Source: Haliotis rubra
Lineage: Eukaryota
DNA: 64,000 bases
Reading direction: 5' to 3'
Assembly: GCF_003918875.1 (NCBI RefSeq)
Contig: NW_025765780.1
Span: forward strand, 1,364,001 to 1,428,000
In this document: one piece after another, positions 2,050 to 31,848 of the stretch
Layout: each line of letters starts with the position of its first letter
How positions within the stretch are numbered: the stretch's first letter is position 1
Translations under genes and position numbers: made by a program
Notes under the pieces: generated by a model
What the model was told of the DNA's origin: nothing
The model's input: only the letters and a program-made list of their open reading frames with translations
Databases searched by the model: none

Positions 2050-5000
2050 ACCTAGCAGTTATCATGGTACTGTGTGCCTGGCTTCACAACCAGCAGTTAC
2101 CATGGTGCTGGATGCCTGACTTCACAACCAGCAATTTCCATGGAGCTGTGTGCCTAGCTTCACAAACAGCAGTTACCATTTAGGTGTATGCCTAGCTTCG
2201 CAAGCAGCAGTTACCATGGTGCTGTGTGCCTAGCTTCACAAGCAGCAGTTACCATGGTGCTGTGTGCCTAACTTCACAACCAGCAGTTACCATGGTGCTG
2301 TGTGTCTAGCTTCACACTTAGCAGTTATCATGGTGCTGTATGCCTGGCTTCACACTTAGCAGTTAACAAGGTGTTGTGTGCATAGATTCACACTTAGTAG
2401 TAACCATGGTGATGTATACCTTGCTTCACAACCAGCAGTTACCATGGTGCTGTGTGTCAAGCTTCACACTTAGCAGTTATCATGGTGCTGTATGCCTGGC
2501 TTCACACATAGCAGTTAACAAGGTGTTGTGAGCATAGATTCACACTTAGTAGTAACCATGGTGCTGTATACCTTGCTTCACAAACAGGAGTTACCATGGT
2601 GGTGTGTGCCTGGCTTCACACTTAGCAGTTAACAAGGTGTTGTGTGCATAGATTCAAACTTAGTAGTAACCATGGTGCTGTATACCTTGCTTCACAAACA
2701 GGAGTTACCATGGTGGTGTGTGCCTGGCTTCACACCTAGCAGTTATCATGGTGTTGTGTGCCTGGCTTCACAACCAGCAGTTACCATGGTGCTGGATGCC
2801 TGACTTCACAACCAGCAATTTCCATGGAGCTGTGTGCCTAGCTTCACAAACACCATGGTGCTGTGTGCTAAGCTTCACACTCAGCAGTTACCATGGAGCT
2901 GTTTGCCAAGCTTCACACTTAGCAGTTATCATGATGCTGTGTGCCTGGCATCACACTTAGGAGTTACCATGCTGCTGTGTGTCAAGCTTCACACTTAGTA
3001 GTTATAATGGTGCTGTGTGCCTAGCATCACTCGTAGCAGTTATCATGATGCTGTGTGCCTAGCATCACACGCACCAGTTATCATGGTGTTGTCCGTCAAG
3101 TTTCACACTTAGTAGTTATAATTGTGCTGTGTGCCTGGCTTCACAACCAGCAGTTACCATGGTGCTGTGTGCCTGGCTTCACACTTTGCAGTTATCATGG
3201 TGATGTGTGCCTGGCTTGACAACCAGGATTTACCATGATGATGTGTGCTAAGCTTCACACTTAGCACTTACCACGGTGCTGTGTGCCAAGCTTCACAACC
3301 AGCAGTTACCATTGAGGGGTGTGCCAAGCTTCACACTTAGCAGTTACAATGGTGCTGTGTGCCAAGCTTCACAACAAACAGTTACAATGGTGCTGTGTGC
3401 CTAACTTCACACTTAACCGTTATCATGATGCTGTCTTCATGGCTTCACACTTAGCAGTTATCATAGTGCTGTGTGCCAAACATTACACGTAGCAGTTATC
3501 ATGGTGCTGTTTCCCAAGCTTCACACTCAGCAGATATCATGGTGCTGTGTGCCAAGCTTCACAATCTGCAGTTACCATGGAGCTGTGTGCCAAGCTTCAC
3601 AACAAACAGTTACAATGGTGCTGTGTGCCTAGCTTCACACTTAACCGTTATCATAGTGCTGTGTGAAAAACATTACACGTAGCAGTTATCATGGTGGTGT
3701 GTGCCAAGCTTCACACTTAGTTAAAATGGTGCTGTGTGCCCGGCTTCACAACCAGCAATTACCATGTTGCTGTGTGCCTAACTTCAAACTTAGCAGTTAC
3801 CATCGTGCTGTGTACGTAGCTCCAAACGTAGCAGTTATCATGGTGCTGTATGCCTAGCTTCAGTCTTAGCAGTTACCGTGGTGCTATATTCATAGCGTCA
3901 CAAATGGCAGTTACCATGGTGGTGTGTGCCTGGCTTCACAACCAGCAGTTACCATGGTGCGGTGTGCATAGCTTCACACTGAGCAAATATCATGGAGCTG
4001 TGTGCCTAGCTTCACAAGCAGCAGTTACCATGGTGCTGTTTGCCTGGCTTCACACTTAGCAGTTATCATGATGCTGTGTGCCAAGCTTCACACTTAGTAG
4101 TTAAAATGGTGCTGTGTGCCCGGCTTCACAACCAGCAATTACCATGTTGCTGTGTGCCTAACTTCAAACTTAGCAGTTACCATGGTGCTGTGTACATAGC
4201 TTCAAACTTAGCAGTTATCATGGTGCTGTATGTCTAGCTGTGTGCCTAACTTCACTCTTAGCAGTTACCATGGTGCTGTGTATCTAGCTTCACACTTAGC
4301 AGTTATTATGGTGCTGTATGCCTAGCTTCACACTTAGCAGTTACCATGGTGCTGTGTGCCAAGCTTCACTCTTAGCAGTTACAATGGTGCTGTGTATCTA
4401 GCTTCACACTTAGGAATTACCATACAGCTATGTACCTAGCTTCACAACCAACAGTTACCGTGGTGGTGTGTGCCTGGCTTCACCCTTAGCAGTGACAATG
4501 GTGCTGTGTGCCTAGCCTCACATTTTGCAGTTATCATGATGCTGTGTGCCTGGCTTCATACTTAGCAGTTATCATAGTGCTGTGTGCCAAGCTTCACACT
4601 TTGTAATTACCATGGAGCTCTGTGTAAAGCTTCACAACCAGCAGTTACCAAGTTGCTGTGTGCCTGGCTTCACACTTAGCAGTTACAATGGTACTGTGTG
4701 CCTAACTTCACACTTAGCAGTTATCGTGGTGCTGTATGCCTAGCTCCACACTTAGCAATTACCACATAGTTATGTGCCTAGCTTCACAACCAGCAGTTGC
4801 CATAGTGGTGTGTGCCCGGCTTCACACTTTGCAGTGACAATGGTGCTGTGTGCCTACCTTCACACTTTGCAGTTATCATGATGCTCTGTGCCTGGCTTCA
4901 TACTTATCAGTTATCATGGTGCTGTGTGATAAGCTCCACACGTAGCAGTTATCATCGTGCTGTGTGTCAAGCTTCACAACCAGCAGTTACCATGGTGCTG

Positions 5001-8000
5001 TGTGCCTAACTTCACTCTTAGCAGTTACCATGGTGCTGTGTATCTAGCTTCACACTTAGCAGTTATTATGGTGCTGTGTGCCAAGCTTCACACTTAGCTG
5101 TTATCATGGTGCTGTGTGCCAAGCTTCACAACCAGCAGTTACCATGGTGCTGTGTGCCTAACTTCACTCTTAGCAGTTACCATGGTGCTGTGTATCTAGC
5201 TTCACACTTAGCAGTTATTATGGTGCTGTGTGCCTAGTTTCACACTTAGCAGTTACCATGGTGTTGTGTGCCAAGCTTCACTCTTAGCAGTTACCATGGT
5301 GCTGTGTATCTAGCGTCACGCTTAGTAGTTATCATATATATATATTTATTTCCGGTACTGAAAGGCCACAGGCCTGTAGTACAATGCATTTATAATTCAA
5401 TATTTACACGCACGGATAATATACATGAAGAAGGGAAAATAATCAACTTTAGGTTACATTGTGTTCTGAGATATATTCTGTCCTAAACAACATGGCATAG
5501 TAAGCAAACATGGACAAGTCTTGAAGTATAGTAAGGGTTTTGTTATTCAAAAATGCTGAGAATTTATAAAGGTTTGGATGGGCACAATAATATTTCTTAA
5601 TATACAACTTTCTGATGGAATTATAAGTAGTTATCATGGTGCTCTGTGCCTAGTTTCACACCCAGCAGTAACCATGGTGCTGTGTGCCTAGCTTCAGAAC
5701 CGGCAGTTACCATGGTGCTGTGTGCCTAGCTTCATACTCAGCAGTTACCATGGTGCTGTGTGCCTAGCTTCAGAACCGGCAGTTACCATGGTGCTGTGTG
5801 CCTAGCTTCACACTTAGCAGTTATCACGGTGCTGTGTGCCTAGCTTCATACTCAGCAGTTACCATGGTGCTGTGTTTCTAGCTTCACTGTTAGCAGTTAC
5901 CGTGGTGCTGTGTGCCAAGCTTCACACTTAGCAGTTATCATTGTGCTGTGTACCTGGCTTCACAACCAGCAGTTACCATGGTGCTGTGTGCCTAGCTTCA
6001 CACTGAGCAGTTACCATGGTGCTGTGTGCCAAGCTTCATACTTATCAGTTATCATTGTGCTGTGTGCCAAGGTTCACACGTAACAGTTATCATGGTGCTG
6101 TGTGCCAAGCTTCACACTTAGTAGTTATCATGGTGCTGTGTGCCTAGCTTCACAGCCAGCAGTTATAATGGTGCTTTGTGCCTAGCTTTACTCTTAGCAG
6201 TTACCACGGTGCTGTGTATCTAGCTTCACACTTAGCAGTTATTATGGTGCTGTATGCCTAGCTTCACACTTAGCATTTACCATGGTGCTGTGTATCTAGC
6301 TTCACATTTAGAAGTTATTATGGTGCTGTGTGCCAAGCTTCGCACTTAGCATTCATCATTGTGCTGTGTACCTGGGTTCACAACCAGCCGTTACCATAGT
6401 GCTGTGTGCCTAGCTTCACAACCAGCAGTTACCATGGTGTTGTGTGCCTAGCTTCACACTGAGCAGTTACCATGGTGCTGAGTCCCTAGCTTCACATTTA
6501 GCAGTTACCATGGTGTTGCATGCCTAGCTTCACACTTAGTAGTTATCATAGTGTTCTATGCCTAGCTTCACACTTAGCAGTTATCACGGTGCTGTGTGCC
6601 TAGCTTCACAACCAGCAGTAACCATGGTGGTGTGTGCCTGGCTTCACACTTAGCAGTTACAATGGTGCTGTGTGCCTAGCTTCACACTTTGCAGTTATCA
6701 TGATGCTCTGTGCCTGGCTTCACACTTAGCAGTTATCATTGTGCTGTGTACCTGGCTTCACAACCATCAGTTACCATGGTGTTGTGTGCCTAGCTTCACA
6801 CTGAGCAGTTACCATGGTGCTGAGTCCCTAGCTTCACATTTAGCAGTTACCATGGTGTTGCATGCCTAGCTTCACACTTAGTAGTTATCATAGTGTTCTA
6901 TGCCTAGCTTCACACTTAGCAGTTATCACGGTGCTGTGTGCCTAGCTTCACAACCAGCAGTAACCATGGTGGTGTGTGCCTGGCTTCACACTTAGCAGTT
7001 ACAATGGTGCTGTGTGCCTAGCTTCACACTTTGCAGTTATCATGATGCTCTGTGCCTGGCTTCACACTTAGCAGTTATCATTGTGCTGTGTACCTGGCTT
7101 CACAACCATCAGTTACCATGGTGTTGTGTGCCTAGCTTCACACTGAGCAGTTACCATGGTGCTGAGTCCCTAGCTTCACATTTAGCAGTTACCATGGTGT
7201 TGCATGCCTAGCTTCACACTTAGTAGTTATCATAGTGTTCTATGCCTAGCTTCACACTTAGCAGTTATCACGGTGCTGTGTGCCTAGCTTCACAACCAGC
7301 AGTTACCATGGTGGTGTGTGCCTGGCTTCACACTTAGCAGTTACAATGGTGCTGTGTGCCTAGCTTCACACTTTGCAGTTATCATGATGCTCTGTGCCTG
7401 GCTTCACACTTAGCAGTTATCATGGTGCTGTGTATCTAGCTTCACAACCAGCAGTTACCATGGTGCTGTGTGCCTAACTTCACACTTAGTAGTTACCATG
7501 ATGCTGTTTCTATCTTCACAGTTAGCATTTACCGTGGTGCTGTGTACCAAGCTTCACACTTAGCAGTTATCATTGCGCTGTGTACCTGGCTTCACAACCA
7601 GGAATTACCATGGTGCTGTGTTTCTAGCTTCACTGTTAGCAGTTACCATGGTGCTGTGTGCCAAGCTTCACACTTAGCAGTTATCATTGTGCTGTGTACC
7701 TGGCTTCACAACCAGCAGTTACCATGGTGTTGTGTGCCTAGCTTCACACTGAGCAGTTACCATGGTGCTGTGAGCCAAGCTTCATACTTATCAGTTATCA
7801 TTGTGCTGTGTGCCAAGGTTCACACGTAACAGTTATCATGGTGCTGTGTGCCAAGCTTCACACTTAGTAGTTATCATGGTGCTGTGTGCCTAGCTTCACA
7901 GCCAGCAGTTATAATGGTGCTGTGTGCCTAGCTTTACTCTTAGCAGTTACCATGGTGCTGTGTATCTAGCTTCACACTTAGCAGTTATTATGGTGCTGTA

Positions 8001-9835
8001 TGCCTAGCTTCACACTTAGCATTTACCATGGTGCTGTGTATCTAGCTTCACATTTAGAAGTTATTATGGTGCTGTGTGCCAAGCTTCGCACTTAGCATTC
8101 ATCATTGTGCTGTGTACCTGGGTTCACAACCAGCCGTTACCATAGTGCTGTGTGCCTAGCTTCACAACCAGCAGTTACCATGGTGGTGTGTGCCTAGCTT
8201 CATACTCAGCAGTTACCATGGTGCTGTGTGTCTAACTTCTCACTTAGCAGTTATCATTGTGCTGTGTACCTGGCTTCACAACCATCAGTTACCATGGTGT
8301 TGTGTGCCTAGCTTCACACTGAGCAGTTACCATGGTGCTGAGTCCCTAGCTTCACATTTAGCAGTTACCATGGTGTTGCATGCCTAGCTTCACACTTAGT
8401 AGTTATCATAGTGTTCTATGCCTAGCTTCACACTTAGCAGTTATCACGGTGCTGTGTGCCTAGCTTCACAACCAGCAGTTACCATGGTGGTGTGTGCCTG
8501 GCTTCACACTTAGCAGTTATCATTGTGCTGTGTGCCAAGCTTCACACTTAGCAGTTATCACGGTGCTGTGTGCCTAGCTTCACAACCAGCAGTTATCACG
8601 GTGCTGTGTGCCAAGCTTCACACTTAGCAGTTATCATTGTGCTGTGTGCCTAGCTTCACAACCAGCAGTTACCATGGTGGTGTGTGCCTGGCTTCACACT
8701 TAGCAGTTACAATGGTGCTGTGTGCCTAGCTTCACACTTTGCAGTTATCATGATGCTCTGTGCCTGGCTTCACACTTAGCAGTTATCATGGTGCTGTGTA
8801 TCTAGCTTCACAACCAGCAGTTACCATGGTGCTGTGTGCCTAACTTCACACTTAGTAGTTACCATGATGCTGTTTCTATCTTCACAGTTAGCATTTACCG
8901 TGGTGCTGTGTACCAAGCTTCACACTTAGCAGTTATCATTGCGCTGTGTACCTGGCTTCACAACCAGGAATTACCATGGTGCTGTGTGCCTAACTTCACA
9001 CTTAGTAGTTGTCATAGTGTTGTATGCCTAGCTTCACAACCAGCAGTTACCATGGTGCTGTGTGTCTATCGTCACACTTAGCAGTTACCCTGGTGCTGTG
9101 TGCCAAGCTTCACACTTAGCAGTTAACATTGTGGTGTTTACCTGGCTTCACAACCAGCAGTTACCATGGCGTCGTGTGCCTAGCTTCACACTTAGTAGTT
9201 ATCATATTTTTTCTATGTCTAGCTTCGCACTTAGCAGTTGCCTTGGTGTTGTGTGCCAAGCTTCACACTTAGAAGTTATCATGGTGCTGTGTGCCAAGCT
9301 TCACACTTAGCAGTTATCATGGCGCTGTGTGCCTAGCTTCAGACTTAATAGTTATCATGGTGCTGTGTGCCTAGCTTCACAACCAGCAGTTATCATGGTG
9401 CTGTGTGCCTAGCTTCAGACTTAATAGTTATCATGGTGCTGTGTGCCTAGCTTCACAACCAGCAGTTATCATGATGCTGTATGCCTAGCTTCACACGTAG
9501 CAGTTAACGTGTTGCTCTGTGCCAAGGTTCACACTTAGCAGTTATCATTGTGCTGTGTACCTGGCTTCACAACCAGCAGTTACCATGGTGTTGTGTGCCT
9601 AGCTTCACCCTTAGCAGTTACCATGGTTCTTTGTGCCAAGCTTCACTACTGGAAGTTACCATGGTGCTGTGTGCCTAGCTGCTTCACAAGCAACAGTTAC
9701 CATGGTGTTGTGCGGTTGGCTTCACATCAAGTACTTATAATAGTGTTGTGTGCCTAGCTTCACACTAATCAGTTATCATGGTGTTGTATGCCTATATTCA
9801 TAATTAACAGTTATCCTTGTTTTGTGTGCCGAACG
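2050..9835. repeat. 38-bp satellite array (~200 units) with higher-order structure
   Basis: Consensus CAGCAGTTACCATGGTGCTGTGTGCCTAGCTTCACAAC / ...CACACTT. Identical ORF translations at 6672 and 7014 give a 342-bp (9 x 38) higher-order period. Confidence 0.97.
5336..5625 (-). mobile_element. 5'-truncated non-LTR retrotransposon (CR1/L2-like 3' end) inserted in the satellite
   Basis: Flanked by the 12-bp direct repeat AGTAGTTATCAT (5324-5335, 5626-5637). The minus strand encodes YNSIRKLYIKKYYCAHPNLYKFSAFLNNK...LSMFAYYAMLFR, resembling a LINE ORF2 C-terminus, followed by a 3' UTR ending AATAAA(TA)n. Confidence 0.75.
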
Positions 9836-10099
9836 TCACAACAGAAAGATAGCTGGTTCCTTAGTTATTTTATTAGGGGTATAGCAGTTCTTGGACTGTA
9901 TCATCAGCGTAGGTAGGCGATATTGGATCCTGAACATTGCTAACCGTAACGTGTGACAACCATTTGTCATCTGACAATCTTTGACACTTGTTATAATCGT
10001 TTACACATATCTTCATGATGAAGTTGCAATCGTACAGCAAGTGATTTGTCCCTTCAGATTGAAATATAATGAATCAGTGAGAGCTCGGGTGGTGTTGGA

Positions 10100-10690
10100 A
10101 CAGTCAGGCTGGTAAGGTTCACGATCCACTCAAGTACACTTACCCTGTCTACGCGCAGCCCAGACAGCGAATGTGACTTCTCCCAGGAAGCGTTGCCCAG
10201 TTGCACACACTAAACATTTCCCCCCAAAATTGTAGACTATCCAACACTGCAGCTTTCTGCCTTACCCAAAATGTCAGAAGGGCTGTGCTCCCGATGGAGA
10301 CCCCGGGCACTCCTGATCTGCGCAAAAAGATCAGGAGGTACCAAATTAAGGGCACCTAGAATCTTGTTAATTACCATTGATTTTACAGATTAAAAATGGA
10401 ATATAGCACACAGAGAGAGTTGTCCTGAGTTGTCCTGGCACAGTCAGGCTCGTAGCGGTTTCAGGTACCATTGTGTACTCTACAACGAAGACAGCGAATC
10501 TGACTTTTCCCCTGACTTTGCCTAGTCGAAGAAACCAGAGAATATGAAGACTCCCCAACACTGCAGCGTTCTGCATTTCCCAGAGTGTCAGAAGGGTTGT
10601 GCTTCTGGTAAAGAACCTGGGCACTTTCCTGATCTGCGCTTAAAGATCAGGAGGTGTCAAATCACGGGCACCGAGAACAATGCGGAGTCA
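10100..10690 (-). mobile_element. Two tandem 3' fragments of an RLE-type (R4/Dong-like) non-LTR retrotransposon
   Basis: Minus-strand translation IVLGARDLTPPDL*AQIRKV...LWEMQNAAVLGSLHIL, and a second copy LGALNLVPPDL...QKAAVLDSL. These resemble the PIVIGALG...QKAVLLGT C-terminus of RLE LINEs. Paralogous pair at 25290-25875. Confidence 0.55.
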
Positions 10691-10884
10691 GAAAAGTCAA
10701 TGATATAAATAAATTCATTGGCTTTATCAAAAAGCCCAAGATCAGGCTTTTGGCAGGAATTCTTCTAAGGTCGTATATGGGCACATTCCAAAGAATAAAG
10801 AAGTTAAATGCATGATGCCCTGGACACGTCCAGAGTCGAACCATGGAGGGACCTTGGAGTCATTTGAAGATACAGACATGACGA

Positions 10885-11130
10885 AGTGAGTGAGTGAGTT
10901 TAGTTTTACGACGCACTCAGCAATATTCCAGCTATATGGCGGCGGTCTGTAAATAATCGAGTCTGGACCAGACAACCCAGTGGTCAACAGCATGAGCATC
11001 GATCTGCGCAATTGGGAACCGATGACATGTGTCAACCAAGCCAACGAGCCTGACCATCCGATCCCGTTTGTCGCCTCTTACGACAAGCATGGGTTGCTGA
11101 AGATCAATATTCTAACCCGGACCTTCACGA
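10885..11130 (-). mobile_element. SINE family 1 (CTTGTCGTAAGAGGCGAC core, (CACT)n tail)
   Basis: Reverse complement of the element at 55721-55989; ends in a (TCAC)n tail. Confidence 0.85.
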
Positions 11131-11750
11131 GTTGAAAATAGATATGAAACTCAACCACAAAAAAAAAACCAACATGTATTGCAGCGTCATCGGGTTTTTT
11201 TGGTTTTTTTCGATGTTACCAGCTGACGTCACACGATATCCATGTCATTGGATATGTTTAATCTGCTGTCAGCAGGGCTTCAAAAATATTATTGCCCCAC
11301 GCCCTGGTTCGCTAAACTGTCTATGTCAATAAACTGATTGATTGATGTCGGGCAACTAAACTGCTCATTTCAACTTAACTGTGGGCAAGTAACAAATAAA
11401 ACTTGCTATAAAATCAACAAACGAACATTTCTGTATCTTTATCTGTTTTTCGTTGAGATTTAACGGTGTTTAATTCACGATTTCTGTGGACATTGTTGCC
11501 GAAGAAAGATAGAGTTACTTCCCTTGGTTTTTATTTCGCTCTTGAAGGGTCCATTTGACTGGGTCCTTTCTTGCATATCAACTTGCGATAGTAGTTTACA
11601 AGCGCAGGCGCTTAACAACGTTTTCTGGTCTATGTGGCAAGTAAACTTTTAAAACAAAATGAACCTCTGTGTCAGTTTGTCCTCATTCTAATAGGGAATT
11701 GACTCAAATTAGGGAATAGTCTTTAAAATGACAAAACCGTATACGGCAAT

Positions 11751-12475: not shown

Positions 12476-13702
12476 TCATGTCAAAGTATATCTTTCAATT
12501 CCGTGTTTCCTCCGCTTCAAACAGTAACACATGGCTATTATCACCAGTAACAGGCCCACGACACATAGAGTTACAATGAGGGCCAGGATAGTCACCTCGG
12601 CCGTGTGAGCGTCCAGTCCGACCCATGTAGATGGGGCAGATGTGGTTGGTGTTGTAGTGGACGTAGACGATGAGGAAGTTGTAGATGTAGTGGGAATTTT
12701 CATGAGGTTGGGGATGATGTCCAGCCACAGGGTCACTCGTCTGGGGTAGACGTGGTCACGTACTGACATGTTTGTTGTGAAGGACAGGTAACGCTGGTCG
12801 GCCATAGTGAACTCAGGCCACGCCTGTCCAAGCTTTTCTTCAACAGCAGGGTTGGGGTTACTGTGAAAATAAAGTAATCACTTTGAAAGACTGATGAATA
12901 TTCCCCTCTTGTGAGCGAATGTACAAGTATCGCCGTATTTTTAGACATATGTATTGTTATTTTAACGTATTCACAGGGCTATCTCTGGCGAAGGATGGAT
13001 AGTGGTCAAATAAGTAGAAGTAACACTTCCTGCTGGTGTTCAACAACGCGTGCGTCCTGGCAAAGAGGACTCCCGGTACTAAGAAGCTGGGGTCACCGTA
13101 TGTTGAAAGTACCTGTTCTTGAGGCAGCGGCTGGTCAGATGGTGGTCGGGGGTAGGTGTACTCAACGCTGACGATATTATTGATGGATGTAGTGCTAGCT
13201 TCTAATGACAATGATGTAACTGTTGGGAGAATATCTGTATCAAACTCCTTCTGCTTGAAGATGTCGGTAGCGTATGTGTAATTATATGCCCTGTCGAATG
13301 CTAGAGCACTCGTCAACAGGAGTCCCCCCTTCGTTGTTGTTGGCCCCTACCATAACGTCGATGCCCTTGATACACGTAGTATTTAAGAATGCGATGTCTC
13401 TCATTAAGACTTGGGGATCATCTTTGACAAAGATTCCATCAGTGGTGGGGACCCACGTGTACTGCATGAGCTCGTAGGCTGGCGACCCCAAAACAGAAAA
13501 AAAATCATCACCGGCACAGTGGACGATACATCGGTTGTATTTGGCAGGAACACATTCAACGTGAGACAGGAATATTGCTGGAGACATGGCAGTCCATAGC
13601 TCGAAGCATTGAATATGTCAGAAGCTTCTGGGTGTGGTTGAGGTTTTCTGGATCGGAGATCTCCAACTGGAGGTTTCGTGTACGGGATTCCGTAGTAGCC
13701 AA
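12476..13702 (-). pseudogene. Carboxylesterase subfamily A pseudogene with four internal deletions and a frameshift; exon 2 (12476-12860) intact
   Basis: Colinear fragments of copies 1-3. Junctions at ~12970 (His motif and splice donor lost), ~13500 (GESAG lost), ~13570 and ~13703 (start and signal peptide lost); one extra C at ~13325. Confidence 0.9.
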
Positions 13703-13949
13703 ATAAAATATGCAAACACTGTACACAGTCGGCAACGGACAATATGCACAGTCACTATGCCCCGATATGTGTCATGTGAGTCACGTGACCTCTCTACGAC
13801 AGGTGTGAAGCTACGCGACAGAGGGGCTAGTTCAGTCAGGACAAGTTTAGGAAATTCAGGTTTTTCGCAAATATTAATATTTCTTTATCTTTAACTAGAA
13901 TGATAAAAACAGCGTGTCTACCAATATTGGTAGCTTAATTTGCTCAGTT

Positions 13950-14500
13950 TCAATACCAGCAATTATTTTGGTGTTGTATTCCTAGCTGCACACCCAACAA
14001 TTATCGTGGTGTTGTTTGCCTAACTTCACACCCAAGAATTATCTTGGTGTTGTATGCCTAGCTTCACACTAAGCAATTACCTTGGTGTTGTGTGAATAGC
14101 TTCACTTCCAGCAACCATCTTGGTGCTGTATGCCTAGCTTCAATTCCAGCAATTACCTTGGTGTTGTGTGAATAGCTTCACTTCCAGCAATTATCTTGGT
14201 GTTGTATTCCTAGCTGCACGCCCAAGAATTATCTTGGTGTTGTATGCCTAGCTTCACACTCAGCAATTATCTTGGTGTTGTATGCCTAGCTTCACACTCA
14301 GCAATTATCTTGGTGTTGTATGCCTAGCTTCACACTCAGCAATTATCTTGGTGTTGTATGCCTAGCTTCACACTCAGCAATTATCTTGGTGTTGTATGCC
14401 TAGCTTCACACTCAGCAATTATCTTGGTGTTGTATGCCTAGCTTCACTTCCAGCAATTAACTTTGTGCTGTGTGTCCAGCTTCACTATTTTGGTGGTGTA
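13950..14500. repeat. 38-bp satellite, variant CAGCAATTATCTTGGTGTTGTATGCCTAGCTTCACACT (~14 units)
   Basis: Clear tandem units, homologous to the 2050-9835 array but with their own fixed variants. Confidence 0.93.
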
Positions 14501-19284: not shown

Positions 19285-19299
19285 TAGCTTCCAATGGTT

Positions 19300-20916: not shown

Positions 20917-23043
20917 TCATTCCAAAGCATATCTTTCATTTCCTAGTTTCCGCCGCTTCAAACAGTAACACATGGCTATTATCACCAGTAACAGGCCCAC
21001 GACACATAGAGTTACAATGAGGGCCAGGATAGTCACCTCGGCCGTGTGAGCGTCCAGTCCGAACCATGTAGATGGGGCAGATGTGGTTGGTGTTGTAGTG
21101 GACGTAGACGATGAGGAAGTTGTAGATGTGGTGGGAATTTTCATGAGATTGGGGATGATGTCAAGCCACAGGGTCACTCGTCTGGGGTAGACGTGGTCAC
21201 GTACTGACATGTTTGTTGTGAAGGATAGGTAACGCTGGTCGGCCATAGTGAACTCGGGCCATGCCTGTCCAAGCTTTTCTTCAACAGTAGGGTTGGGGTT
21301 ACTGTGAAAATAAAGTAATCACTTTGAAATGCTGATAAATATTCCCCTCTTGTGAGCAAATGTACAAGTATCGCGGTATTTTTAGACATATGTATTGTTA
21401 TTTTAACGTATTACACTTAAAGACAGCTGACTGATGACACACTCTACACGACAATCGTTGAAATGAAATGATGACATCATAATGAAAACAGTTACGTACC
21501 CAGTCTTGGCAAAATCAGCAATGAAAGAAACAAATGTGTCCGCCACCTGATACTCCTCTGCCGTTAGGTTCCCTGAGTAGCCAAGCATCTTGACCGTGGC
21601 CGGATTCAGGTCAAACAGATACAAGGTGTCCACTCCATGGCTCATGCCTTTCACAGGGCTATCTCTGGCGAAGGATGGATAGTGGTCAAATAAGTAGAAG
21701 TAACACTTCCTGCTGGTGTTTAACAACACGTGTGTCCTGGCAAAGAGGACTCCCGGTACCAAGAAGCTAGGGTCACCATATGTTGAAAGTACCTGTTCTT
21801 GAGGCAGCGGCTGGTCAGATGGTGGTCGGGGGTAGGTGTACTCAACGCTGACGATATTATTGATGGATGGAGTGCTAGCTCCTAATGACAATGATGTAAC
21901 TGTTGGGAGAATATCTGTATCAAACTCCTTCTGCTTGAAGATGTCGGTAGCGTATGTGTAATTATATGCCCTGTCGAATGCTAGAGCACTCGTCAGCAAG
22001 AGTCCCCCTTCGTTGTTGTTGGCTCCTACCATAACGTCGATGTCCTTGATACACGTAGTATTTAAGAATGTTATGTCTCTCATTAAGACTTGGGGATCGT
22101 TTTTGACAAAGATTCCATCAATGGTGGGGACCCACGTGTACTGTATGACCTCGTAGGCTGGCGTGCCACCAAAATAGGAATAGGCTAACACTCTGGTACT
22201 GTCGTTCGTCCTCATACAGTCTACCATGGCCCGTTGTCTGCTCTTTGCGTCACCACTTCCACCACGACAACCTAAAATATATCCAACATACATTGCTACA
22301 AATAGATCATTTCTGTTGATCGCCCAGAGAGATGTGGCAGCTCCACTCTGTAGAACTGCTCTCTGGAACAGCCCCTTTGACCCCGGATACAACACGTGAT
22401 AGGCCACACTCGCCGCCCCTGCAGATTCTCCAATGATGGTGATGTTGTTGCTGTCACCACCAAACGCTTCAATGTTAGTCTTGACCCACTGGAGCGCCAG
22501 GTGTTGATCCCATAATCCGTAGTTACCTGGAGCGACGTCATTTCCGGTACTAAAAAATCCGAATATTCCCAATCTGTACTGGATGGTGACGACTATAACG
22601 TCACCTTTTGTCACCAATTGCCAAGGCTCGTACAAAGAAGCGGATCCATACACGAATCCTCCCCCGTGTATCCAGACCATCACCGGCACACTGGACGATA
22701 CATCGGTTGTATTTGGCAGGAACACATTCAACGTGAGACAGTCTTCACTCATAGCTGGAAAGGAAAAGTTCAAAGGGAGCATTGGCGATCGCTGGAGACA
22801 TGGCAGTCCATAGCTCGTAGCATTAAATATGTCAGAAACTCCTGGGTGTGGTTGAGGTTTTCTGAATCGGAGATCTCCAACTGGAGGTTTCGCGTACGGG
22901 ATACCGTAGTAGCCAAAGTAAGGTTGTCCTTCCCTACTGGTTCTCTCCACTCCCTGTATATATCCCCATGTGGAATTTATCTCTGGTGCATCCATCCCTA
23001 CAGCAGGGAGGACCAACATGGACACAATAATCAGCTGAATCAT
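20917..23043 (-). CDS. Carboxylesterase type B, subfamily A copy 2, predicted type-I membrane protein (exons 23043-21500 and 21301-20917)
   Basis: Full Ser/Glu/His triad motifs. A GT-AG intron at 21499-21302 restores FAKTG-NPNP. Exon 2 encodes WPEFT...RRVTLW, a Thr/Ser-rich stalk, hydrophobic VTILALIVTLCVVGLLLVIIAMCYCL and KRRKLGNERYALE*. Confidence 0.93.
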
Positions 23044-23772
23044 TTTAAACTCCGCTACATTGGACGGTGTACTGACTTTCGTGAACAACTTTCCCACCAC
23101 TCCTCACCTGTCCTTCTTGACTGAGATCCTCGTATTGAATATTGCGAATTGTTGTTTCCTGTCCTGTTCGCACAGAGTGATTTGTATTTACTATTCACTG
23201 ACTGTTTACATACCGGATTAAGGCGTTCCTGGTGTTGACATATGCTCGTACAATCTGTACTGTCAATACGCCCAGGTATGTGCTTGTGAGAGTCACGTGT
23301 GTGACCTATATTTGACAGGCGTAGTAGATACGGTATGACCTTTAGTCAGAATAACAAGACAGTGGTACCGGTAGCGCACTTTGCCCCAAATACCTGGTTT
23401 CAGAGCCAGCAGTGATCTTTGTGTTGTATGCATAGGATAGTTATCATAGTTTTGTGTGCCTAACTTCACAACCGAAAGCTAGCTGGTTGCCTTGGTAACT
23501 GTTCTTGATGCTGTTACTGGTATTGTATAAGGGGCATAGCAGTTCAGCGGAGGTGGGAGATATATGATTCTAAGCGATGCTTTAATTTTGATCACCACAG
23601 CTTGTCATCTAACACAACTTTGACACTTGCTATCAACACTATGTTATAGTTGTTTACACATATGTTTATGATGAAGTCTTAATCTTACAGTTGACTCTGC
23701 ATCTTGCAGATTTCTCATGGATTTGGAAAGAGTTTGTCCCTTCTAAAGTATTGCATTCTACAGATTGAAATA

Positions 23773-25261
23773 TACTCTCCCAAAAAAGAAACGCATCATA
23801 AAAATAGCAATTTCATGTAGCAATGAATTAAAACGTGATTCATTTTACAAAAGGTTTTGCTCTGTTTATGAGTCCTGTGGTGTTTATGTTTTGAAACATC
23901 ACAACAAAACGCACCATCCGTAAAATACCCGTATTTAACAGCATGATTTTCAATTTCGGCGTGTAGTGTCACAGAATAAACAATTCACATGCAATGCACG
24001 TGAAAGTTGGGGATAAGATACTCTCAATGATGGGTATAAAAGGTTGATCGCTGTCTGTCGATTATTCACTGTATTTGGAATATTGTTGACGAACGCAAAA
24101 CGCAACGTCTAAGTGAAGCCAACCGTCATATCGCCATTGCTTTTCTTGAAGCTGGCCAGTCTCAACATGCAGTTGCCCGACGCATGAATGTTCACGAAAG
24201 CACCATTTCACGGCTCTGGGAGAGATATCGCCGGCAGAATTCGGTAGCAGATGCCCCTCGTAATGGGCGACCTCGAGCGAACAGCTACGGCGACCAGTAC
24301 CGCTCGACAAATACCCAGATTGAGGAGGCTTTCTGCACAGACTGTCAGGAACAGGTTGAGAGAGGCTCGTTTACGTGACAGAAGACCTTATTTTGACCCT
24401 GTGCTTCGACAACAACATCGTCGACATCGAGTTCAATGGTGCACCAACGTTCAGGCCTGGGACCTACCGAATTGGCGTAGAATCTGGTTCAGTGATGAAT
24501 CACGATTTCTACTGGAACGACGCGATGGAAGAATGGGGGTGTACAGACGTCGACGTGAACGTTTCGACGACGCTTGCGTTCCCCAGGTGGACAGATTCGG
24601 CCGGCAAAGTGTTATGATGTGGGGGGTGATCACCTGCCAAAGGAGAAGTGATTTGGTGATGATCCAGGGCAACCTGACAGCTCAACGGTACTGTGACGTA
24701 ATCCTACGCCCACACCTCCTTCCAATCATTGATCGCCAGAGGGAGTTGTTTCAACAGGACAGTACGAGGCCCCACACAGCACGTCACACTAGAGACTTCC
24801 TCCAGAACCACAACATCAATGTGCTCCCCTGGCCCTCAAGATCACCGGACTTAAACCCGATCGACCAACTGTGGGATGCCCTGGACAGACGGGTGCGACG
24901 CCGTAACCCTCAGCCCCAGACACTTCAGCAACTTGCACAGGCACTACAGGCAGAGTGGGCTGCGATTGGGCAACACGAGATTCATGAGATTCATGAGACT
25001 TATTCGTTCGATGCCGAGGCGATGCCGTGCAGTTCTGGATGCCCACGGTGGTCACACGAGGTATTGACTTCAGCGCCACCACACGTCTCCATGTGACACT
25101 CAAACTGACTTTCCTCGAGTTGGTGCCAAAGACGGATAAATCTGCATTCCCAGTGTGCAATTTCGCTATATTTCATTGACTCATAAAGCCTAAATGATGT
25201 TTCAAAAGAAACATAAAAATACAGTTGAAATTCCTACATGCGTTTCTTTTTGGGGCGAGTA
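23773..25261 (+). mobile_element. Tc1/mariner DNA transposon (1.49 kb), defective transposase
   Basis: TIRs TACTCTCCCAAAAAAGAAACGCAT / ATGCGTTTCTTTTTGGGGCGAGTA with TA TSD. The empty site GAAATATAATG is at ~10061 in the paralogous spacer. Motifs WFSDESRF, QQDSTRPH, SPDLNPIDQLW and GGHTRY, with frameshifts. Confidence 0.95.
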
Positions 25262-25289
25262 TATAATGAATCAGTGAGAGGTCTGGTTG

Positions 25290-25875
25290 GACATGGCACA
25301 GTCTGGCTGGTAAGGATCATGATCAGCTCAGGTACACTTGCCCTGGCTACACGCAGCCCAGACAGCGAATGTAACTTCTCCCAGGAAGCGTTGCCCAGTT
25401 GCACGCAGTAATCCCCCACCCACCCCAATATTGTAAACTATCCAACACTGCAGCCTTCTGCATTACCCAAAGTGTCAGAAGGGCTATGCTCCCGATGAAG
25501 AGATCAGGAGGTACCAAACCACCTAGAATCTTGTTAATTACCTTTATGGTTTACAGATTAAAAGTAGTATAAAGCACAGAGAGAGCGTGAGTTGTACTGG
25601 CACAGTCAGGCGGGTAGCATTTTTTTTTCAGTTCAGGTCCCGTTGCGTTGTCTACACGCAACCCAGACAGCGAATGGGACTTCTCCCTGGAAAAGCTGCC
25701 CAGTCGAACCCGCCAAGATCTTTCCAGAGAATATGAAGACTCCCCAACACTGCAGCGTTCTGCATGACCCAGAGCGTCAGAAGGGCTGTGCTTCTGGTAT
25801 AGAACCTGGGCACTTTCCTGATCTGCGCTTAGAGATCAGGAGGTAGCAAATCACGGGCACCGAGAACAATGGGGG
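25290..25875 (-). mobile_element. Paralogous tandem RLE-type LINE 3' fragments
   Basis: Homologous to 10100-10690; encodes PIVLGARDLLPPDL...MQNAAVLGSLHIL on the minus strand. Confidence 0.55.
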
Positions 25876-27604: not shown

Positions 27605-29721
27605 TCATGACAATGTATCAATCCCGTGTTTCCTCCGCCTCAAACAGTAGCACATGACTATTGTCACCAGTAACAGGCCCACGACACATAGAGTTACAAT
27701 GAGGGCCAGGATAGTCACCTCGGCCGTGTGAGCGTCCAGTCCGAACCATGTAGGGGCAGATGTGGTTGGTGTTGTAGTGGACGTAGACGATGAGGAAGTT
27801 GTAGAAGTGGTGGGAATTTTCATGAGGTTGGGGATGATGTCCAGCCACAGGGTCACTCGTCTGGGGTAGACGTGGTCACGTACTGACATGTTTGTTGTGA
27901 ATGTCAGGTAACGCTGGTCGGCCATATTGAACTCGGGCCATGCCTGTCCAAGCTTTTCCTGAACAGCAGGGTTGGGGTTACTGTGAAAATAAAGTAATCA
28001 CTTTGAAAGACTGATGGATATTCCCCTCATATGAGCGAATGTACAAGTATCGCCGTGTTTTTAGACATATGTATTGTCATTTGAACGTATTACATTAAAC
28101 GACACCTGGCTGATGACACACTCTACATGACGATTGTGGAAATAAAATGATGATATCAAATGAAAACAGTTACGTACCCAGTCTTGGCAAAGTCAGCAAT
28201 GAAAGAAACAAATGTTTCCGCCAGCTGATACTCCTCTGCCGTCAGGTTCCCTGAGTAGCCAAGCATCTTGACCGTGGCCGGATTCAAGTCGAACAGATAC
28301 AAGGTGTCCACTCCATGGCTCATGCCTTTCACAGGGCTATCTCTGGCGAAGGATGGATAGTGGTCAAATAAGTAGAAGTAACACTTCCTGCTGGTGTTCA
28401 ACAACGCGTGCGTCCTGGCAAAGAGGACTCCCGGTACTAAGAAGCTAGGGTCACCGTATGTTGAAAGTACCTGTTCTTGAGGCAGCGGCTGGTCGGATGG
28501 TGGTCGGGGGTAGGTGTACTCAACGCTGACGATATTATTGATGGATGTAGTGCTAGCTTCTAATGACAATGATGTAACTGTTGGGAGAATATCTGTATCA
28601 AACTCCTTCTGCTTGAAAATGTCGGTAGCGTATGTGTAATTATATGCCCTGTCGAATGCTAGAGCACTCGTCAACAGGAGTCCCCCTTCGTTGTTGTTGG
28701 CCCCTACCATAACGTCGATGTCCTTGATACATGTGGTATTTAAGAATGTGATGTCTCTCATTAAGACTTGGGGATTGTTTTTGACAAAGATTCCATCAAT
28801 GGTGGGGACCCACGTGTACTGCATGAGCTGGTAGGCTGGCGTCCCCAAAACAGAAGAAAAGGCTAACACTCTGGTACTATCGTTCTTCCTCATACAGTCT
28901 ACCATGGCCCGTTGTCTGCTGATAATATCCGGGTTATCACCAAGGCAACCTAAACTGCTTCCAACAAACATCGCTAACAATTTGATATATCTGTTGATCG
29001 CCCAGAGAGATGTGGCAGCTCCACTCTGTAGAACAGCTCTCTGGAACAGCCCCTTTGACCCCGGGTACAACACGTGATAGGCCACACTCGCCGCCCCTGC
29101 AGATTCCCCAATGATGGTGATGTTGTTGCTGTCACCACCAAAAGCTTCAATGTTAGTCTTGATCCACTGGAGCGCCAGATGTTGATCCCATAATCCGTAG
29201 TTACCTGGAGCGACGTCATTATCGGTACTAAAAAATCCGAATATTCCCAATCTGTACTGGATGGTGACGACTATAACGTCACCTTTTGTCACCAATTGCC
29301 AAGGCTCGTACAAAGAAGCGGATCCATACACGAATCCTCCCCCGTGTATCCAGACCATCACCGGCACACTGGACGATACATCGGTTGTATTTGGCAGGAA
29401 CACATTCAACGTGAGACAGTCTTCACTCATAGCTTGAAAGGAAAAGTTCAAAGGGAGCATTGGAGATAGCTGGAGACATGGCAGTCCATAGCTCGAAGCA
29501 TTAAATATGTCAGAAACTCCTGGGTGTGGTTGAGGTTTTCTGAATCGGAGATCTCCTACTGGAGGTTTCGCGTACGGGATTCCGTAGTAGCCAAAGTAAG
29601 GTTGTCCTTCCCTACTGGTTCTCTCCACTCCCTGTATATATCCCCAGGTGGAATTTATCACTGGTGCCTCTATCCCTACAGCAGGGAGGACCAACATGGA
29701 CACAATAATCAGCTGAATCAT
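27605..29721 (-). CDS. Carboxylesterase type B, subfamily A copy 3, predicted type-I membrane protein (exons 29721-28178 and 27980-27605)
   Basis: Same motifs and intron position as copy 2; tail RRRKHGIDTLS*. Confidence 0.93.
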
Positions 29722-30194
29722 TTTAAACTCCGCTACATCGAACGGTATACTGACTTTCGTGAACAACTGATTTCCCGTTTATCAAAACTGTCCTTCTTGA
29801 CCAGATAATGTCACGTTGCGAAATGTTGTTATCTGAGCTCAATGTTCTCACAGCTTGGATACTGAAATTTATATGAGATTGTGGCGTTCCTTAGATTGAG
29901 ATGTGGTCCGATATTCATATTGTGTAATTTGATGTATCCAAGCTGTAAACGGTCTGCACAATCCGCTCTTCGGGACGCCCTAGCTTGTAATGTGCACCTC
30001 GTGGGTGGTGTTTAGCGTCCAGTGCTTACGAGAGAGTCACGTGACCTGTAATCTTTCAGGTTCCTGCGCGTGACATCGTCGCTGGGCAGAGTGTGGCCAG
30101 GGCATATCAAGTTCAGTGTATTTCTAAATCGTTATCTTTATTTAAGCTCGCCGTGTCGGCAGATACCATTTGTGGAGGCTGGTTCCCTAACGTC

Positions 30195-31735
30195 ATGTAC
30201 CTAGCATCATACTCAGGAGATATAAAAGTCATACCAATTAGCAGGCCATGAACAGGATGTCTGCTGTCGTCGCGTACCTAGCGCCAATCCCAAGGTGCCT
30301 ACTGACGCCGTATATCTAGCGTCATATCAAGGTTGCCTACTGACATTGTATATACCTAGCGCCAAGCCCAGGATTTCTACTTACGTCGAATACCTAGCGC
30401 AAAGCACAGGATGCCTACTGACGGCTTATGCCTAGCGCCAAGCCAAGGACGTCTGGTGTCTACTGACATTGTATGAACCTAGCGCCCAGCCCAGGATGCC
30501 TACTGACGCTTTATACCTAGCGCCAAGTCCAGGTCGCCTGGTGCCTACTGATATTTTATGTACCTAGCGCCAAGCCCAGGATGCCTACTTACGTCGAATA
30601 CCTAGCGCAAAGACCAGGATGCCTACTGACGCTTTATACCTAGCGCCAAGCCCTGTACGCCAGGTGCCTACTGATATTGTATGTACCTAGCGCCAAGCCC
30701 AGGATGCCTACTTACGTCGAATACCTACTGACGGCTTACACCTAGCGCCAAGCCCAGGACGTCTGGTGTCTACTGACATTGTATGTACCTAGCGCCAAGC
30801 ACAGGATGCCTACTGACGGCTTATACCTAGCGCCAAGCCCACGACGCCTGGTGCCTACTGATATTTTATGTACCTAGCGCCAAGCCAAGCATGCCTACTG
30901 TCGTCGTATACCTAGCGCCAAGCCCAGGATACTTGCTGACATCGTATACGCAGCGTCATGTCCAGGATGCCTACTGACATTGTATACCTAGCGTCAGGCC
31001 TAGGATGCCTACTGACGGCTTATACCTAGCGCCAAGCCCAGGACGCCTGGTGTCTACTGACATTGTATGTACCTAGCGCCAAGCCCAGGATGCCTACTGA
31101 CGGCTTATACCTAGCGCCAAGCCCACGACGCCTGGTGCCTACTGATATTTTATGTACCTAGCGCCAAGCCAAGCATGCCTACTGTCGTCGTATACCTAGC
31201 GCCAAGCCCAGGACGTCTGGTGCCTACTGACATTGTATGTACCTAACGCCATGCTCAGGATACTTGCTGACATCGTATACGCAGCGTCATGTCCAGGATG
31301 CCTACTGACATTGTATACCTAGCGTCAAGCCTATGATGCCTACTGACGGCTTATACATAGTGCCACGCCCATGACGCCTGGTGCCTTCTGAGTTTTATGT
31401 ACCTAGCGCCAAGCCCAGGATGCCTACTGTCGTCGTATAACTAGCGCCAAGCCCACGACGTCTGGTGCCTACTGACATTGTATGTACCTAGCCCAAAGCC
31501 CAGGATGCCTACTGACTGCGTATATCTAACGCCAAGTCCAGGATGCTTACTGACATGGTATACCTAGCTACATGTCCAGGATGCCTACTGACGCTGTATA
31601 CCTAGCTCCAAGCCCAGGACCTCTGGTGCCTACTGACATTGTATGTACCTAGCGTCATGTCCAGGATGCCTACTGTCGCCGTATACCTTGCACCAAGCCC
31701 AGGATGCCAGTTGACATGGTATACCTAGCATCATG
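30195..31735. repeat. GC-richer 38/40/47-bp satellite (CAGGATGCCTACTGACGCTGTATACCTAGCGCCAAGCC)
   Basis: Tandem units with a basic 38-bp period and recurrent 2-bp and 9-bp (CGTCTGGTG-like) insertions; ~35 units. Confidence 0.93.
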
Positions 31736-31848
31736 TCATGCACTCTCTCCGAGCTGAGTGTAAGAACGGAACGTCCCACGTTGACAGGATGTCCACTTGG
31801 ATGGATGTTGGAGATACTAGTCAGTTGTTGACTGGTTACATCAACGTC

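What the first reader, a model, noticed from the sequence alone, without database searches (positions are those of the whole stretch)
2050..31735. A 38-bp repeat sits at the same upstream position of every subfamily-A esterase gene but has expanded independently to ~200, ~14, ~2 and ~35 units
Seen: ~100-170 bp beyond the conserved GTCACGT motif, each paralog carries a tandem array with a 38-bp basic period. The arrays are 7.8 kb at copy 1 (2050-9835), 0.55 kb at the pseudogene (13950-14500), about two degenerate units at copy 2 (~23405-23475) and 1.5 kb at copy 3 (30195-31735). Each has its own homogenised consensus. The copy-3 unit aligns without gaps to the copy-1 unit at about 21/38 positions by my hand count, sharing CAG...TG..GCTGT.T.CCTAGC..CA. 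The right flank of the copy-1 array (CACAACAGAAAGATAGCTGGTT) matches the flank of the short copy-2 seed. Inference: one ancestral seed was duplicated with the gene, then amplified and homogenised locally. This is a natural series showing satellite birth, and it may act as a promoter-adjacent length 'dial' on paralog expression.
Basis: partly seen in the sequence, partly recalled or inferred. Interest (0 to 1): 0.72.

Follow-up and report, generated by a model that had tools for sequence, protein, structure and literature searches.

The report
Paralog-linked 38-bp minisatellite upstream of esterases
Four tandem copies of a secreted-esterase gene each carry the same locus-specific 38-base repeat just upstream, grown to very different lengths; this is real, but it is an ordinary by-product of gene duplication in a repeat-rich mollusc genome, and nothing shows that it tunes expression.

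Summary
Arrays with a 38-bp period lie 110-170 bp beyond a conserved GTCACGT motif and 360-460 bp upstream of the ATG of three intact carboxylesterase genes and one pseudogene. They hold about 200, 14, 1.7 and 38-40 units.

- **Locus-specific.** The units occur nowhere else in the 1.38-Gb assembly, always on one strand. They cluster by locus: 250 of 254 nearest neighbours come from the same array.
- **Copy 1 and copy 2.** The flanks of the copy-1 array are colinear with the flanks of the two-unit copy-2 remnant.
- **Copy 3.** Homology to copy 3 is still supported through the pseudogene unit (22/38, p about 0.001), an excess of transitions, the same phase, strand and period, and a homologous flanking promoter segment.

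Descent with the gene followed by local amplification and homogenisation is supported. Whether the ancestor was a short seed or an array that collapsed in copy 2 is open. The "expression dial" has no support: no RNA data, no constrained columns, no unusual structure.

The pattern is common here. Three other esterase clusters carry their own co-duplicated arrays (34, 20, 94 and 52 bp) with unequal copy numbers, and unchecked first-reader notes of this scan list similar "seed" cases on other DNA of this genome. The 7.8-kb length is unverified. Low novelty.

The parts
68..1642 (-). Subfamily-A carboxylesterase copy 1: single exon, 524 aa, signal peptide, GESAG motif
   Evidence: Pfam PF00135, E 7e-128; ATG and GESAG
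1643..2049 (-). Copy-1 upstream/promoter region with the GTCACGT motif at 1926-1932
2050..5335 (+). 38-bp array 1, proximal part (older, more heterogeneous units)
   Evidence: TRF; wraparound alignment; lag analysis
5336..5625 (+). Young SINE-like insertion inside array 1, flanked by the duplicated target AGTAGTTATCAT
   Evidence: 245 first-look candidates genome-wide, the 40 scored mostly 97-98% identical
5626..9843 (+). 38-bp array 1, distal part. It includes a 9-unit (342-bp) higher-order core at about 6200-7300. The last unit matches the copy-2 unit by position and sequence.
9844..10886 (+). Single-copy right flank of array 1, colinear with the right flank of the copy-2 remnant
   Evidence: blastn
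12970..13703 (-). Esterase pseudogene fragment with internal deletions and stops; lacks the GESAG region
13704..13955 (-). Pseudogene upstream region, copy-1 type, with GTCACGTGAC at 13780-13789
13956..14485 (+). 38-bp array of the pseudogene: 14 units, five of them identical in a row
21403..23043 (-). Subfamily-A esterase copy 2 (546 aa, extended C-terminus)
23408..23473 (+). Copy-2 remnant: one truncated (28 nt) and one full 38-bp unit, 36% different from each other
24251..25096 (+). Tc1/mariner-type transposase ORF. Its element splits the copy-2 right flank between about 23690 and 25261.
   Evidence: Pfam DDE_3 and HTH_Tnp_Tc3_2; blastn colinearity
28156..29721 (-). Subfamily-A esterase copy 3 (521 aa)
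29722..30175 (-). Copy-3 upstream region. It is a different promoter type shared with the C2153 paralogs, with GTCACGTGAC at 30036-30045.
30176..31738 (+). Copy-3 array: 38-40 units of 38 bp and 47 bp (85/123/284-bp higher-order periods), CpG-retaining

Best explanation
This is a locus-specific minisatellite (VNTR-type array, 38-bp unit). It already existed as at least two tandem units upstream of an ancestral secreted-carboxylesterase gene and was copied along with the gene, promoter and spacer when the gene duplicated in tandem. Since then each copy of the array has turned over on its own by unequal exchange or replication slippage. That turnover fixes local variants (concerted evolution within an array) and lets copy number drift, giving about 200, 14, 1.7 and 38-40 units. 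The interior of array 1 is the most derived. Its edge units, the pseudogene array and the copy-2 remnant keep older character states that are also seen in the copy-3 array. The coding regions and 3' flanks look younger (dS 0.11-0.17), most likely because gene conversion homogenised them, while the distal promoters and arrays lie outside the converted tract. The arrays are most likely selectively neutral or nearly so. The duplication and local turnover are shown; the neutrality is inferred.
For: - Arrays, period and coordinates; unit counts.
- Same strand only, and only at the four sites in the window.
- No copy elsewhere in the 1.38-Gb genome at up to 3 mismatches for all three consensus units and for a degenerate core.
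- Flanks of array 1 are colinear on both sides with the copy-2 remnant.
- Clustering by locus: 250/254 nearest neighbours are from the same array. The copy-3 clade has support 0.989 and the pseudogene clade (13/14 units) 0.92. Exceptions are edge units; the last unit of array 1 is nearest to the copy-2 unit.
- Recent local amplification: a 9-unit higher-order repeat with 94% identity at lag 9, and a 381-bp stretch that recurs 1.7 kb further on at 99% identity. Five identical units sit in the pseudogene array.
- Copy-3 homology: pseudogene vs copy-3 consensus 22/38, p 0.0006-0.001 over all rotations and strands. Best phase and strand are the same for both comparisons.
- Transitions are enriched among mismatches, and a transition-aware score gives p 0.013 (copy 1 vs 3) and <0.0003 (pseudogene vs 3).
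- At the 6 sites where the copy-1 and pseudogene consensus differ, copy 3 agrees with the pseudogene at 4 and with copy 1 at 0.
- The segment between the motif and the first unit is homologous (p 0.013 and <0.001).
- Neutrality: no column-specific constraint, no unusual single-strand folding, no Rfam family.
- The same kind of co-duplicated, unequal arrays occurs in three other esterase clusters. Arrays of 200 bp or more cover 7.3% of 198 kb of control sequence.
- Gene conversion: dS 0.11-0.17 against promoters that only partly align, and the copy-3 promoter groups with the outgroup paralogs on C2153.
Against: - The copy-1 vs copy-3 consensus similarity alone (18/38) is not above shuffles. The copy-3 link therefore rests on the 14-unit pseudogene array as intermediate and on post hoc transition scoring.
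- The distal flanks of the pseudogene and copy-3 arrays are not homologous to those of copies 1 and 2, so positional homology there is one-sided.
- The C2153 paralogs have no unit-like sequence. Their homology ends before the site, so they cannot polarise the ancestral state.
- Neutrality is argued from absence of evidence. No expression, methylation or population length data were available.
- The assembly appears to be a hybrid built from short Nanopore reads (PMC6774278), so the 7.8-kb length and its internal near-identical blocks could be mis-assembled.
Confidence: 0.78

Rival explanations
1. Regulatory length dial. The arrays are functional promoter-adjacent elements, such as arrays of transcription-factor sites, spacers or insulators, whose unit number sets the expression level of each paralog.
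For: The arrays begin 110-170 bp beyond a conserved palindromic E-box-like motif and 360-460 bp from the ATG. VNTR length and motif content are known to associate with expression of nearby genes in humans (PMC8024321, PMC10234305). The CCTAGC core is shared by all arrays.
Against: No RNA run holds the locus, so neither the transcription start nor expression is known. Columns shared between loci are no less variable inside arrays than other columns: 0.886 vs 0.856 for array 1 and 0.874 vs 0.847 for the copy-3 array. The pseudogene keeps a recently amplified array. Unrelated arrays with unequal copy numbers lie 2.4-4.5 kb from other esterase paralogs, which suggests a general neutral process.
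Confidence: 0.1
2. The copy-3 array arose independently of the copy-1, pseudogene and copy-2 repeat. The shared 38-bp period and CCTAGC core are coincidence.
For: The copy-1 vs copy-3 consensus shares 18/38 positions, p 0.16-0.43 against shuffles. The copy-3 promoter is of another type. The distal flank of the copy-3 array is not homologous to the others. Minisatellites are frequent in this genome.
Against: Pseudogene vs copy 3 gives 22/38, p about 0.001. The period, strand and best phase are identical. Transitions are in excess, and 4 of 6 polarising sites agree with the pseudogene unit. The adjacent promoter segment is homologous. Five neighbouring arrays with other periods show no comparable similarity (15 tests, lowest p 0.02).
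Confidence: 0.1
3. The repeat is cargo of a mobile element or part of a dispersed satellite family, and its position beside the genes reflects insertions.
For: Mollusc genomes carry many transposon-associated tandem repeats (review PMC12692304). The window holds Tc1/mariner and non-LTR elements.
Against: All matches to the three consensus units and to a degenerate core lie at this one locus in 1.38 Gb, all on one strand, with backward-read controls at 0-3. The array site sits within colinear single-copy flanks in copies 1 and 2.
Confidence: 0.02

Closest known systems
Minisatellites / VNTR loci evolving by unequal exchange and slippage
   Same: The unit is 38 bp, arranged head to tail at a single locus. 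There are higher-order sub-periods, degenerate edge units around a homogenised interior, and very different lengths between homologous arrays.
   Different: The comparison here is between paralogous arrays inside one haploid assembly, not between alleles. Length polymorphism between individuals could not be measured.
Satellite-DNA 'birth from short seed arrays' model (birth, dissemination, clustering; library hypothesis), as reviewed in PMC12692304
   Same: Short and long arrays of one family coexist. One copy has grown to about 7.8 kb while another stays at two units. Each array fixes its own variants (review text).
   Different: Total amount is about 10 kb in a 1.38-Gb genome at four adjacent sites. 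Spread was by gene duplication, not by transposons or genome-wide dissemination. No heterochromatic block is involved.
Promoter-proximal tandem repeats / VNTR expression QTLs (PMC8024321, PMC10234305)
   Same: The arrays sit a few hundred bases upstream of the coding start, next to a conserved promoter motif.
   Different: No link between length and expression was tested or shown. The transcription start is unknown, and there is no sign of constraint on any unit column.
Concerted evolution and gene conversion in tandem gene clusters
   Same: Coding regions and 3' flanks are 91-97% identical (dS 0.11-0.17), while promoters and arrays are much more diverged and group differently.
   Different: The conversion tract is inferred from discordant similarity only. 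No formal conversion test or outgroup species was available.

Membership tests
Minisatellite / VNTR | Unit of roughly 10-100 bp repeated head to tail | tested here: met
   38-bp period at three sites, plus a 1.7-unit remnant
Minisatellite / VNTR | Locus-specific rather than dispersed | tested here: met
   All genome-wide matches lie at C890:1366048-1395614, which is this locus
Minisatellite / VNTR | Copy number varies between individuals | tested here: inconclusive
   Only short-read contigs were available. A second sample holds the start of the copy-3 array with 1 difference. Contigs of two other coded organisms show skips of 757 and 444 bp inside the array, which contigs of repeats cannot prove.
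Satellite DNA family | High genomic abundance in long arrays, usually at many sites | tested here: not met
   About 10 kb in total at four adjacent sites of a 1.38-Gb assembly
Satellite DNA family | Intra-array homogenisation with array-specific variants | tested here: met
   250/254 nearest neighbours from the same locus; clade supports 0.92-0.99
Transposon-borne tandem repeat | Repeat found inside many copies of a mobile element, with element termini at the flanks | tested here: not met
   No copies elsewhere. The flanks are colinear single-copy sequence in copies 1 and 2.
Expression-modulating promoter VNTR | Lies within the promoter or 5' regulatory region of the gene | tested here: inconclusive
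   The arrays are 360-460 bp upstream of the ATG and 110-170 bp beyond a conserved motif, but the transcription start is unknown and there are no RNA runs
Expression-modulating promoter VNTR | Unit number correlates with expression of the adjacent gene | not testable with these tools

The most novel reading that the evidence does not exclude
The co-duplicated upstream arrays are not passive. Arrays of this kind, seen at several esterase clusters of this genome, could act as preferred sites of unequal exchange that build and reshape the tandem gene clusters. Alternatively they could act as length-dependent spacers or insulators that let neighbouring paralogs diverge in expression. Two of the four arrays (pseudogene and copy 3) sit where homology between duplication units ends, which would fit breakpoints inside arrays.
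Probability: 0.08. Interest if true: 0.6.

Novelty: new member of a known kind. Interest (0 to 1): 0.25.

Why it matters
As it stands, this is a clean, well-polarised example of a known process: a minisatellite copied with a gene and then amplified and homogenised separately in each copy. The locus gives a usable internal series:
- a two-unit remnant;
- a 14-unit array next to a dead gene;
- an array of about 40 units;
- an array of about 200 units with a young higher-order core.

That series could serve for studying array dynamics in molluscs once long reads from several animals exist. It also warns annotators that coding-sequence identity underestimates the age of these duplicates. It does not at present bear on esterase regulation.

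Tried and rejected
- **Mobile-element or dispersed-satellite origin:** rejected by genome-wide pattern and DNA searches.
- **A single-copy proto-unit in the C2153 paralogs**, suggested by eye from the alignment: rejected, not above shuffles. Homology with C2153 ends before the array site.
- **Relatedness of the neighbouring 48-bp array** upstream of the 60%-identity paralog left of the window, and of the 44-, 54-, 62- and 25-bp arrays: none convincing.
- **Hairpin-driven slippage:** single-strand folding of three-unit stretches is no better than shuffles.
- **Structured RNA:** no Rfam family in 1-36000.
- **A constrained binding-site core:** the CCTAGC columns are not less variable within arrays.
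- **Array-length polymorphism:** Read laying returned only short-read contigs.
- **Two-gene block duplication** (copy 1 + pseudogene matching copy 2 + copy 3): spacer homology fits, but the pseudogene promoter is of copy-1 type and the distal flanks differ. Left unresolved.
Full report
**Setting**

The window is G000:C890:1364001-1428000 of a 1.378-Gb eukaryotic assembly in 2855 contigs. Size and scaffold count fit the published Haliotis rubra assembly plus about 17 kb, the size of a mitochondrial genome. That assembly has 1,378,265,264 bp in 2,854 scaffolds and was built as a Nanopore/Illumina hybrid from reads with 1-2 kb median length (PMC6774278). Notes of other agents on this genome also call it abalone. 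I treat the species name as an inference.

The minus strand carries single-exon carboxylesterase genes (Pfam PF00135, E about 1e-125 to 1e-130).
- Subfamily A has copy 1 (ATG 1642), copy 2 (ATG 23043) and copy 3 (ATG 29721). All three have a signal-peptide-like N-terminus and the GESAG nucleophile motif.
- Subfamily A also has a deleted pseudogene fragment at 12970-13703.
- Subfamily B has two genes at 53287-54864 and 57836-59365, 47-49% identical in protein to subfamily A.

**The observation**

TRF finds 38-bp arrays at 2048-9813 (203 copies), 13956-14485 (13.9 copies) and 30253-31729. Wraparound alignment to each consensus gives 200, 14 and 38 near-complete units. Copy 2 has one 28-nt and one 38-nt unit at 23408-23473.

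The GTCACGT motif lies at 1926, 13780, 23292 and 30036, 110-170 bp before each first unit. In two copies it is the palindrome GTCACGTGAC.

The copy-3 array mixes 38-bp and 47-bp units into 85-, 123- and 284-bp higher-order periods.

Array 1 is interrupted at 5336-5625 by a 290-bp element flanked by the duplicated target AGTAGTTATCAT. The genome search gave 245 first-look candidates for this element, and the 40 that were scored were mostly 97-98% identical, so it is a young SINE-like insertion.

**Is it more than chance, and is it local?**

In the window, unit-like sequence (at least 25/38 matches) occurs only at the four sites and only on the plus strand. In the whole genome, the three consensus units at up to 3 mismatches match only at this locus, with backward-read controls of 0:
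- the copy-1 unit matches 77 times;
- the copy-3 unit matches 10 times;
- the pseudogene unit matches 6 times.

A degenerate 22-nt core gives 156 forward matches, none reverse. The 100 places listed all lie in array 1; the other 56 were not listed. A 381-bp stretch of array 1 matches only arrays 1 and the pseudogene array. The tool's caveat is that very common words are skipped, but the pattern searches are direct scans.

**Homology of the sites**

Copy 1 and copy 2 are colinear on both sides of the array site:
- 1-1852 matches 21400-23252 at 91%;
- 9809-10037 matches 23439-23690 at 66%;
- 10064-10886 matches 25261-26069 at 77%.

A Tc1/mariner element (DDE_3 ORF at 24251-25096) accounts for the gap in copy 2. 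So a 7.8-kb array in copy 1 sits at the same place as 66 bp in copy 2.

The last unit of array 1 (9806) has the copy-2 unit as its nearest neighbour. This is as expected if edge units escape homogenisation.

The pseudogene promoter is of copy-1 type (75% over 206 bp). The copy-3 promoter is of another type that it shares with two paralogs on contig C2153. Even so, the stretch between the motif and the first unit is significantly alignable between copy 3 and copy 1 (p 0.013) and between copy 3 and the pseudogene (p <0.001).

The distal flanks of the pseudogene and copy-3 arrays have no homology to those of copies 1 and 2.

**Relatedness of the units**

| Comparison | Shared positions | Against shuffles |
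|---|---|---|
| Copy 1 vs pseudogene | 32/38 | p 0.0000 over 2,000 shuffles |
| Copy 1 vs copy 3 | 18/38 (reader said about 21) | p 0.16-0.20 ungapped, 0.43 gapped local |
| Pseudogene vs copy 3 | 22/38 | p 0.0006-0.001 ungapped, 0.0005 gapped |

The shuffle tests take the best of all rotations and both strands. The pseudogene/copy-3 comparison passes, and in both comparisons the best rotation is the same phase on the same strand.

Further evidence for the copy-3 link:
- Mismatches are enriched for transitions: 12/20 and 9/16 against an expected one third.
- A score that counts transitions as half matches gives p 0.013 and <0.0003.
- At the six sites where the copy-1 and pseudogene consensus differ, copy 3 carries the pseudogene state at four (T9, T17, A21, C38) and the copy-1 state at none.
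- The copy-2 units and the edge units of array 1 carry those same states.

The interior of array 1 is therefore the derived form, which explains why it looks least like copy 3. Five other arrays in the neighbourhood (25, 44, 48, 54 and 62 bp) show no comparable similarity (15 tests, lowest p 0.02). I conclude that the copy-3 array is probably homologous (about 0.85-0.9), on evidence that is partly post hoc.

**Local turnover**

Of 254 units, 250 have their nearest neighbour in the same array. The copy-3 units form a clade (support 0.989). Of the 14 pseudogene units, 13 form a clade (0.92) inside the copy-1/copy-2/pseudogene group.

Array 1 has a 9-unit (342-bp) higher-order core at about 6200-7300, with 94% identity at lag 9 against about 81-83% at lag 1. 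It also has a 381-bp stretch (6000-6380) that recurs 1.7 kb further on at 99% identity. The pseudogene array has five identical units in a row. Recent amplification is thus local and separate in each array.

**What is not settled**

The shared period means the common ancestor already had at least two tandem 38-bp units. The two copy-2 units differ by 36% from each other, and a 10-bp deletion joins them. This fits an old, never-homogenised remnant but does not exclude collapse of a longer array.

The C2153 paralogs (83-86% nt identity; one full-length, one fragment, head to head) cannot polarise this. Their homology ends 60-100 bp before the site, and no unit-like sequence is detectable there.

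Coding dS is only 0.11-0.17, and 3' flanks are 89-96% identical. Identity drops sharply 80-210 bp upstream of the ATG, and promoter and array similarity groups the copies differently from the coding sequence. Gene conversion of the coding and 3' parts is the likeliest reason, so the duplicates are older than the coding sequence suggests.

**Function**

I found nothing that points to a regulatory role.
The transcription start and expression are therefore unknown.
- Unit columns conserved between loci are not less variable within arrays.
- Three-unit stretches do not fold better than shuffles on either strand.
- There is no Rfam hit.
- The pseudogene keeps a freshly amplified array.

One difference may deserve a look. 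Arrays 1 and the pseudogene array are CpG-depleted (observed/expected 0.13 and 0.08), while the copy-3 array is not (0.74). This would fit different methylation histories, and several copy-3 to pseudogene differences are CpG to TpG changes.

**How common is this?**

TRF on 198 kb from three other esterase clusters of the same genome shows the same pattern with unrelated units.

| Contig | Unit | Copies at successive paralogs | Position |
|---|---|---|---|
| C2189 | 34 bp | 17, 17, 10, 28 or more | 1.5-2.4 kb upstream, or abutting truncated gene fragments |
| C702 | 20 bp | 55, 28 | about 2.5 kb upstream of two plus-strand genes |
| C702 | 94 bp | three sites | 3.2-4.5 kb upstream |
| C2209 | 52 bp | about 32, 11 | 2.4-2.8 kb upstream of two genes |

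The 60%-identity paralog just left of the window has an unrelated 48-bp array of 53 units about 690 bp upstream. Arrays of 200 bp or more with a period of 10 or more cover 7.3% of the control sequence. By my sum of the arrays listed, about a fifth of the window is tandem array. First-reader notes on other pieces of this genome describe three more 'satellite born from a seed in a paralog' cases (unchecked). The 38-bp series is a good specimen of a routine process in this genome.

**Reads**

Only Logan contigs of short-read runs were available.
- A likely source sample covers 29709-30475 without differences.
- A second sample of the same coded organism covers 30185-30520 with one difference and one gap.
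- A second coded organism has the copy-3 promoter and first units at about 93% identity and a distal array piece at 97%.
- A third coded organism has a few array pieces and the right boundary.

So the copy-3 array is not private to one animal. Lengths cannot be read from such contigs. The joints inside the array (skips of 757 and 444 bp) are not reliable. Given the short Nanopore reads behind the assembly, the 7.8-kb length of array 1 is unverified.

**Verdict**

Descent with the gene plus local amplification and homogenisation is supported. 'Seed' against 'collapse' is open. The expression dial is unsupported. This is a known kind of feature, a minisatellite or young satellite co-duplicated with tandem paralogs, at a locus I found no description of, and common in this genome. 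Interest is low to moderate (0.25).

Noticed in passing
window 5336-5625: 290-bp SINE-like element inserted into array 1, with a 12-bp target duplication (AGTAGTTATCAT). The genome search gave 245 first-look candidates; the 40 scored were mostly 97-98% identical, so the family is very young.
   Followed up: partly
window 13780-13789, 30036-30045 (variants at 1926 and 23292): The conserved promoter motif is the palindrome GTCACGTGAC, an E-box core. From my own knowledge it equals the CLEAR/TFEB-type consensus. It is degenerate in copy 1 (GTCACGTAAG) and split in copy 2 (GTCACGTGTGTGAC).
   Followed up: no
window 1-1852 vs 21400-23252 vs 28084-29801: Coding regions and 3' flanks are 91-97% identical (dS 0.11-0.17), but identity collapses 80-210 bp upstream of the ATG. 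The copy-3 promoter groups with the outgroup paralogs on C2153. This is a likely gene-conversion tract covering CDS and 3' flank.
   Followed up: partly
G000:C890:1354389-1356951 (left of the window; L013): An unrelated 48-bp array of 53 units lies about 690 bp upstream of a plus-strand esterase paralog (60% aa identity, 1357641-1359119). A 25-bp array of 18 units lies at 1360221-1360691.
   Followed up: partly
G000:C2189:2868605-2925972; C702:329506-403408; C2209:956649-987143 (L018-L036): Other esterase clusters carry their own co-duplicated arrays (34, 20, 94, 55 and 52 bp) with unequal copy numbers at successive paralogs.
   Followed up: partly
G000:C2153:366437-379856 (L011, L014): A head-to-head pair of subfamily-A paralogs (one full-length with a stop reported, one fragment). 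They share a copy-3-type promoter, and more than 400 bp beyond it, at high identity. There is no 38-bp repeat.
   Followed up: partly
window 2050-9843, 13956-14485 vs 30176-31738: CpG observed/expected is 0.13 and 0.08 in the copy-1 and pseudogene arrays but 0.74 in the copy-3 array (window average 0.61). This hints at different methylation histories of paralogous arrays.
   Followed up: no
window 34931-35998, 41094-42711, 49535-50307, 50602-50772: Further unrelated tandem arrays: 50/54 bp x 20, 44 bp x 37 at 90% identity, 45/62/107 bp, and 61 bp.
   Followed up: no
window 59474-59609 and 60139-63805: An N gap lies directly upstream of subfamily-B gene 2. Beyond it is a non-LTR retrotransposon on the minus strand (endonuclease, RVT_1 and RNase H ORFs).
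   Followed up: no
window 21403-21468: Copy 2 reads through the stop position used by copies 1 and 3 and gains about 22 extra C-terminal residues.
   Followed up: no
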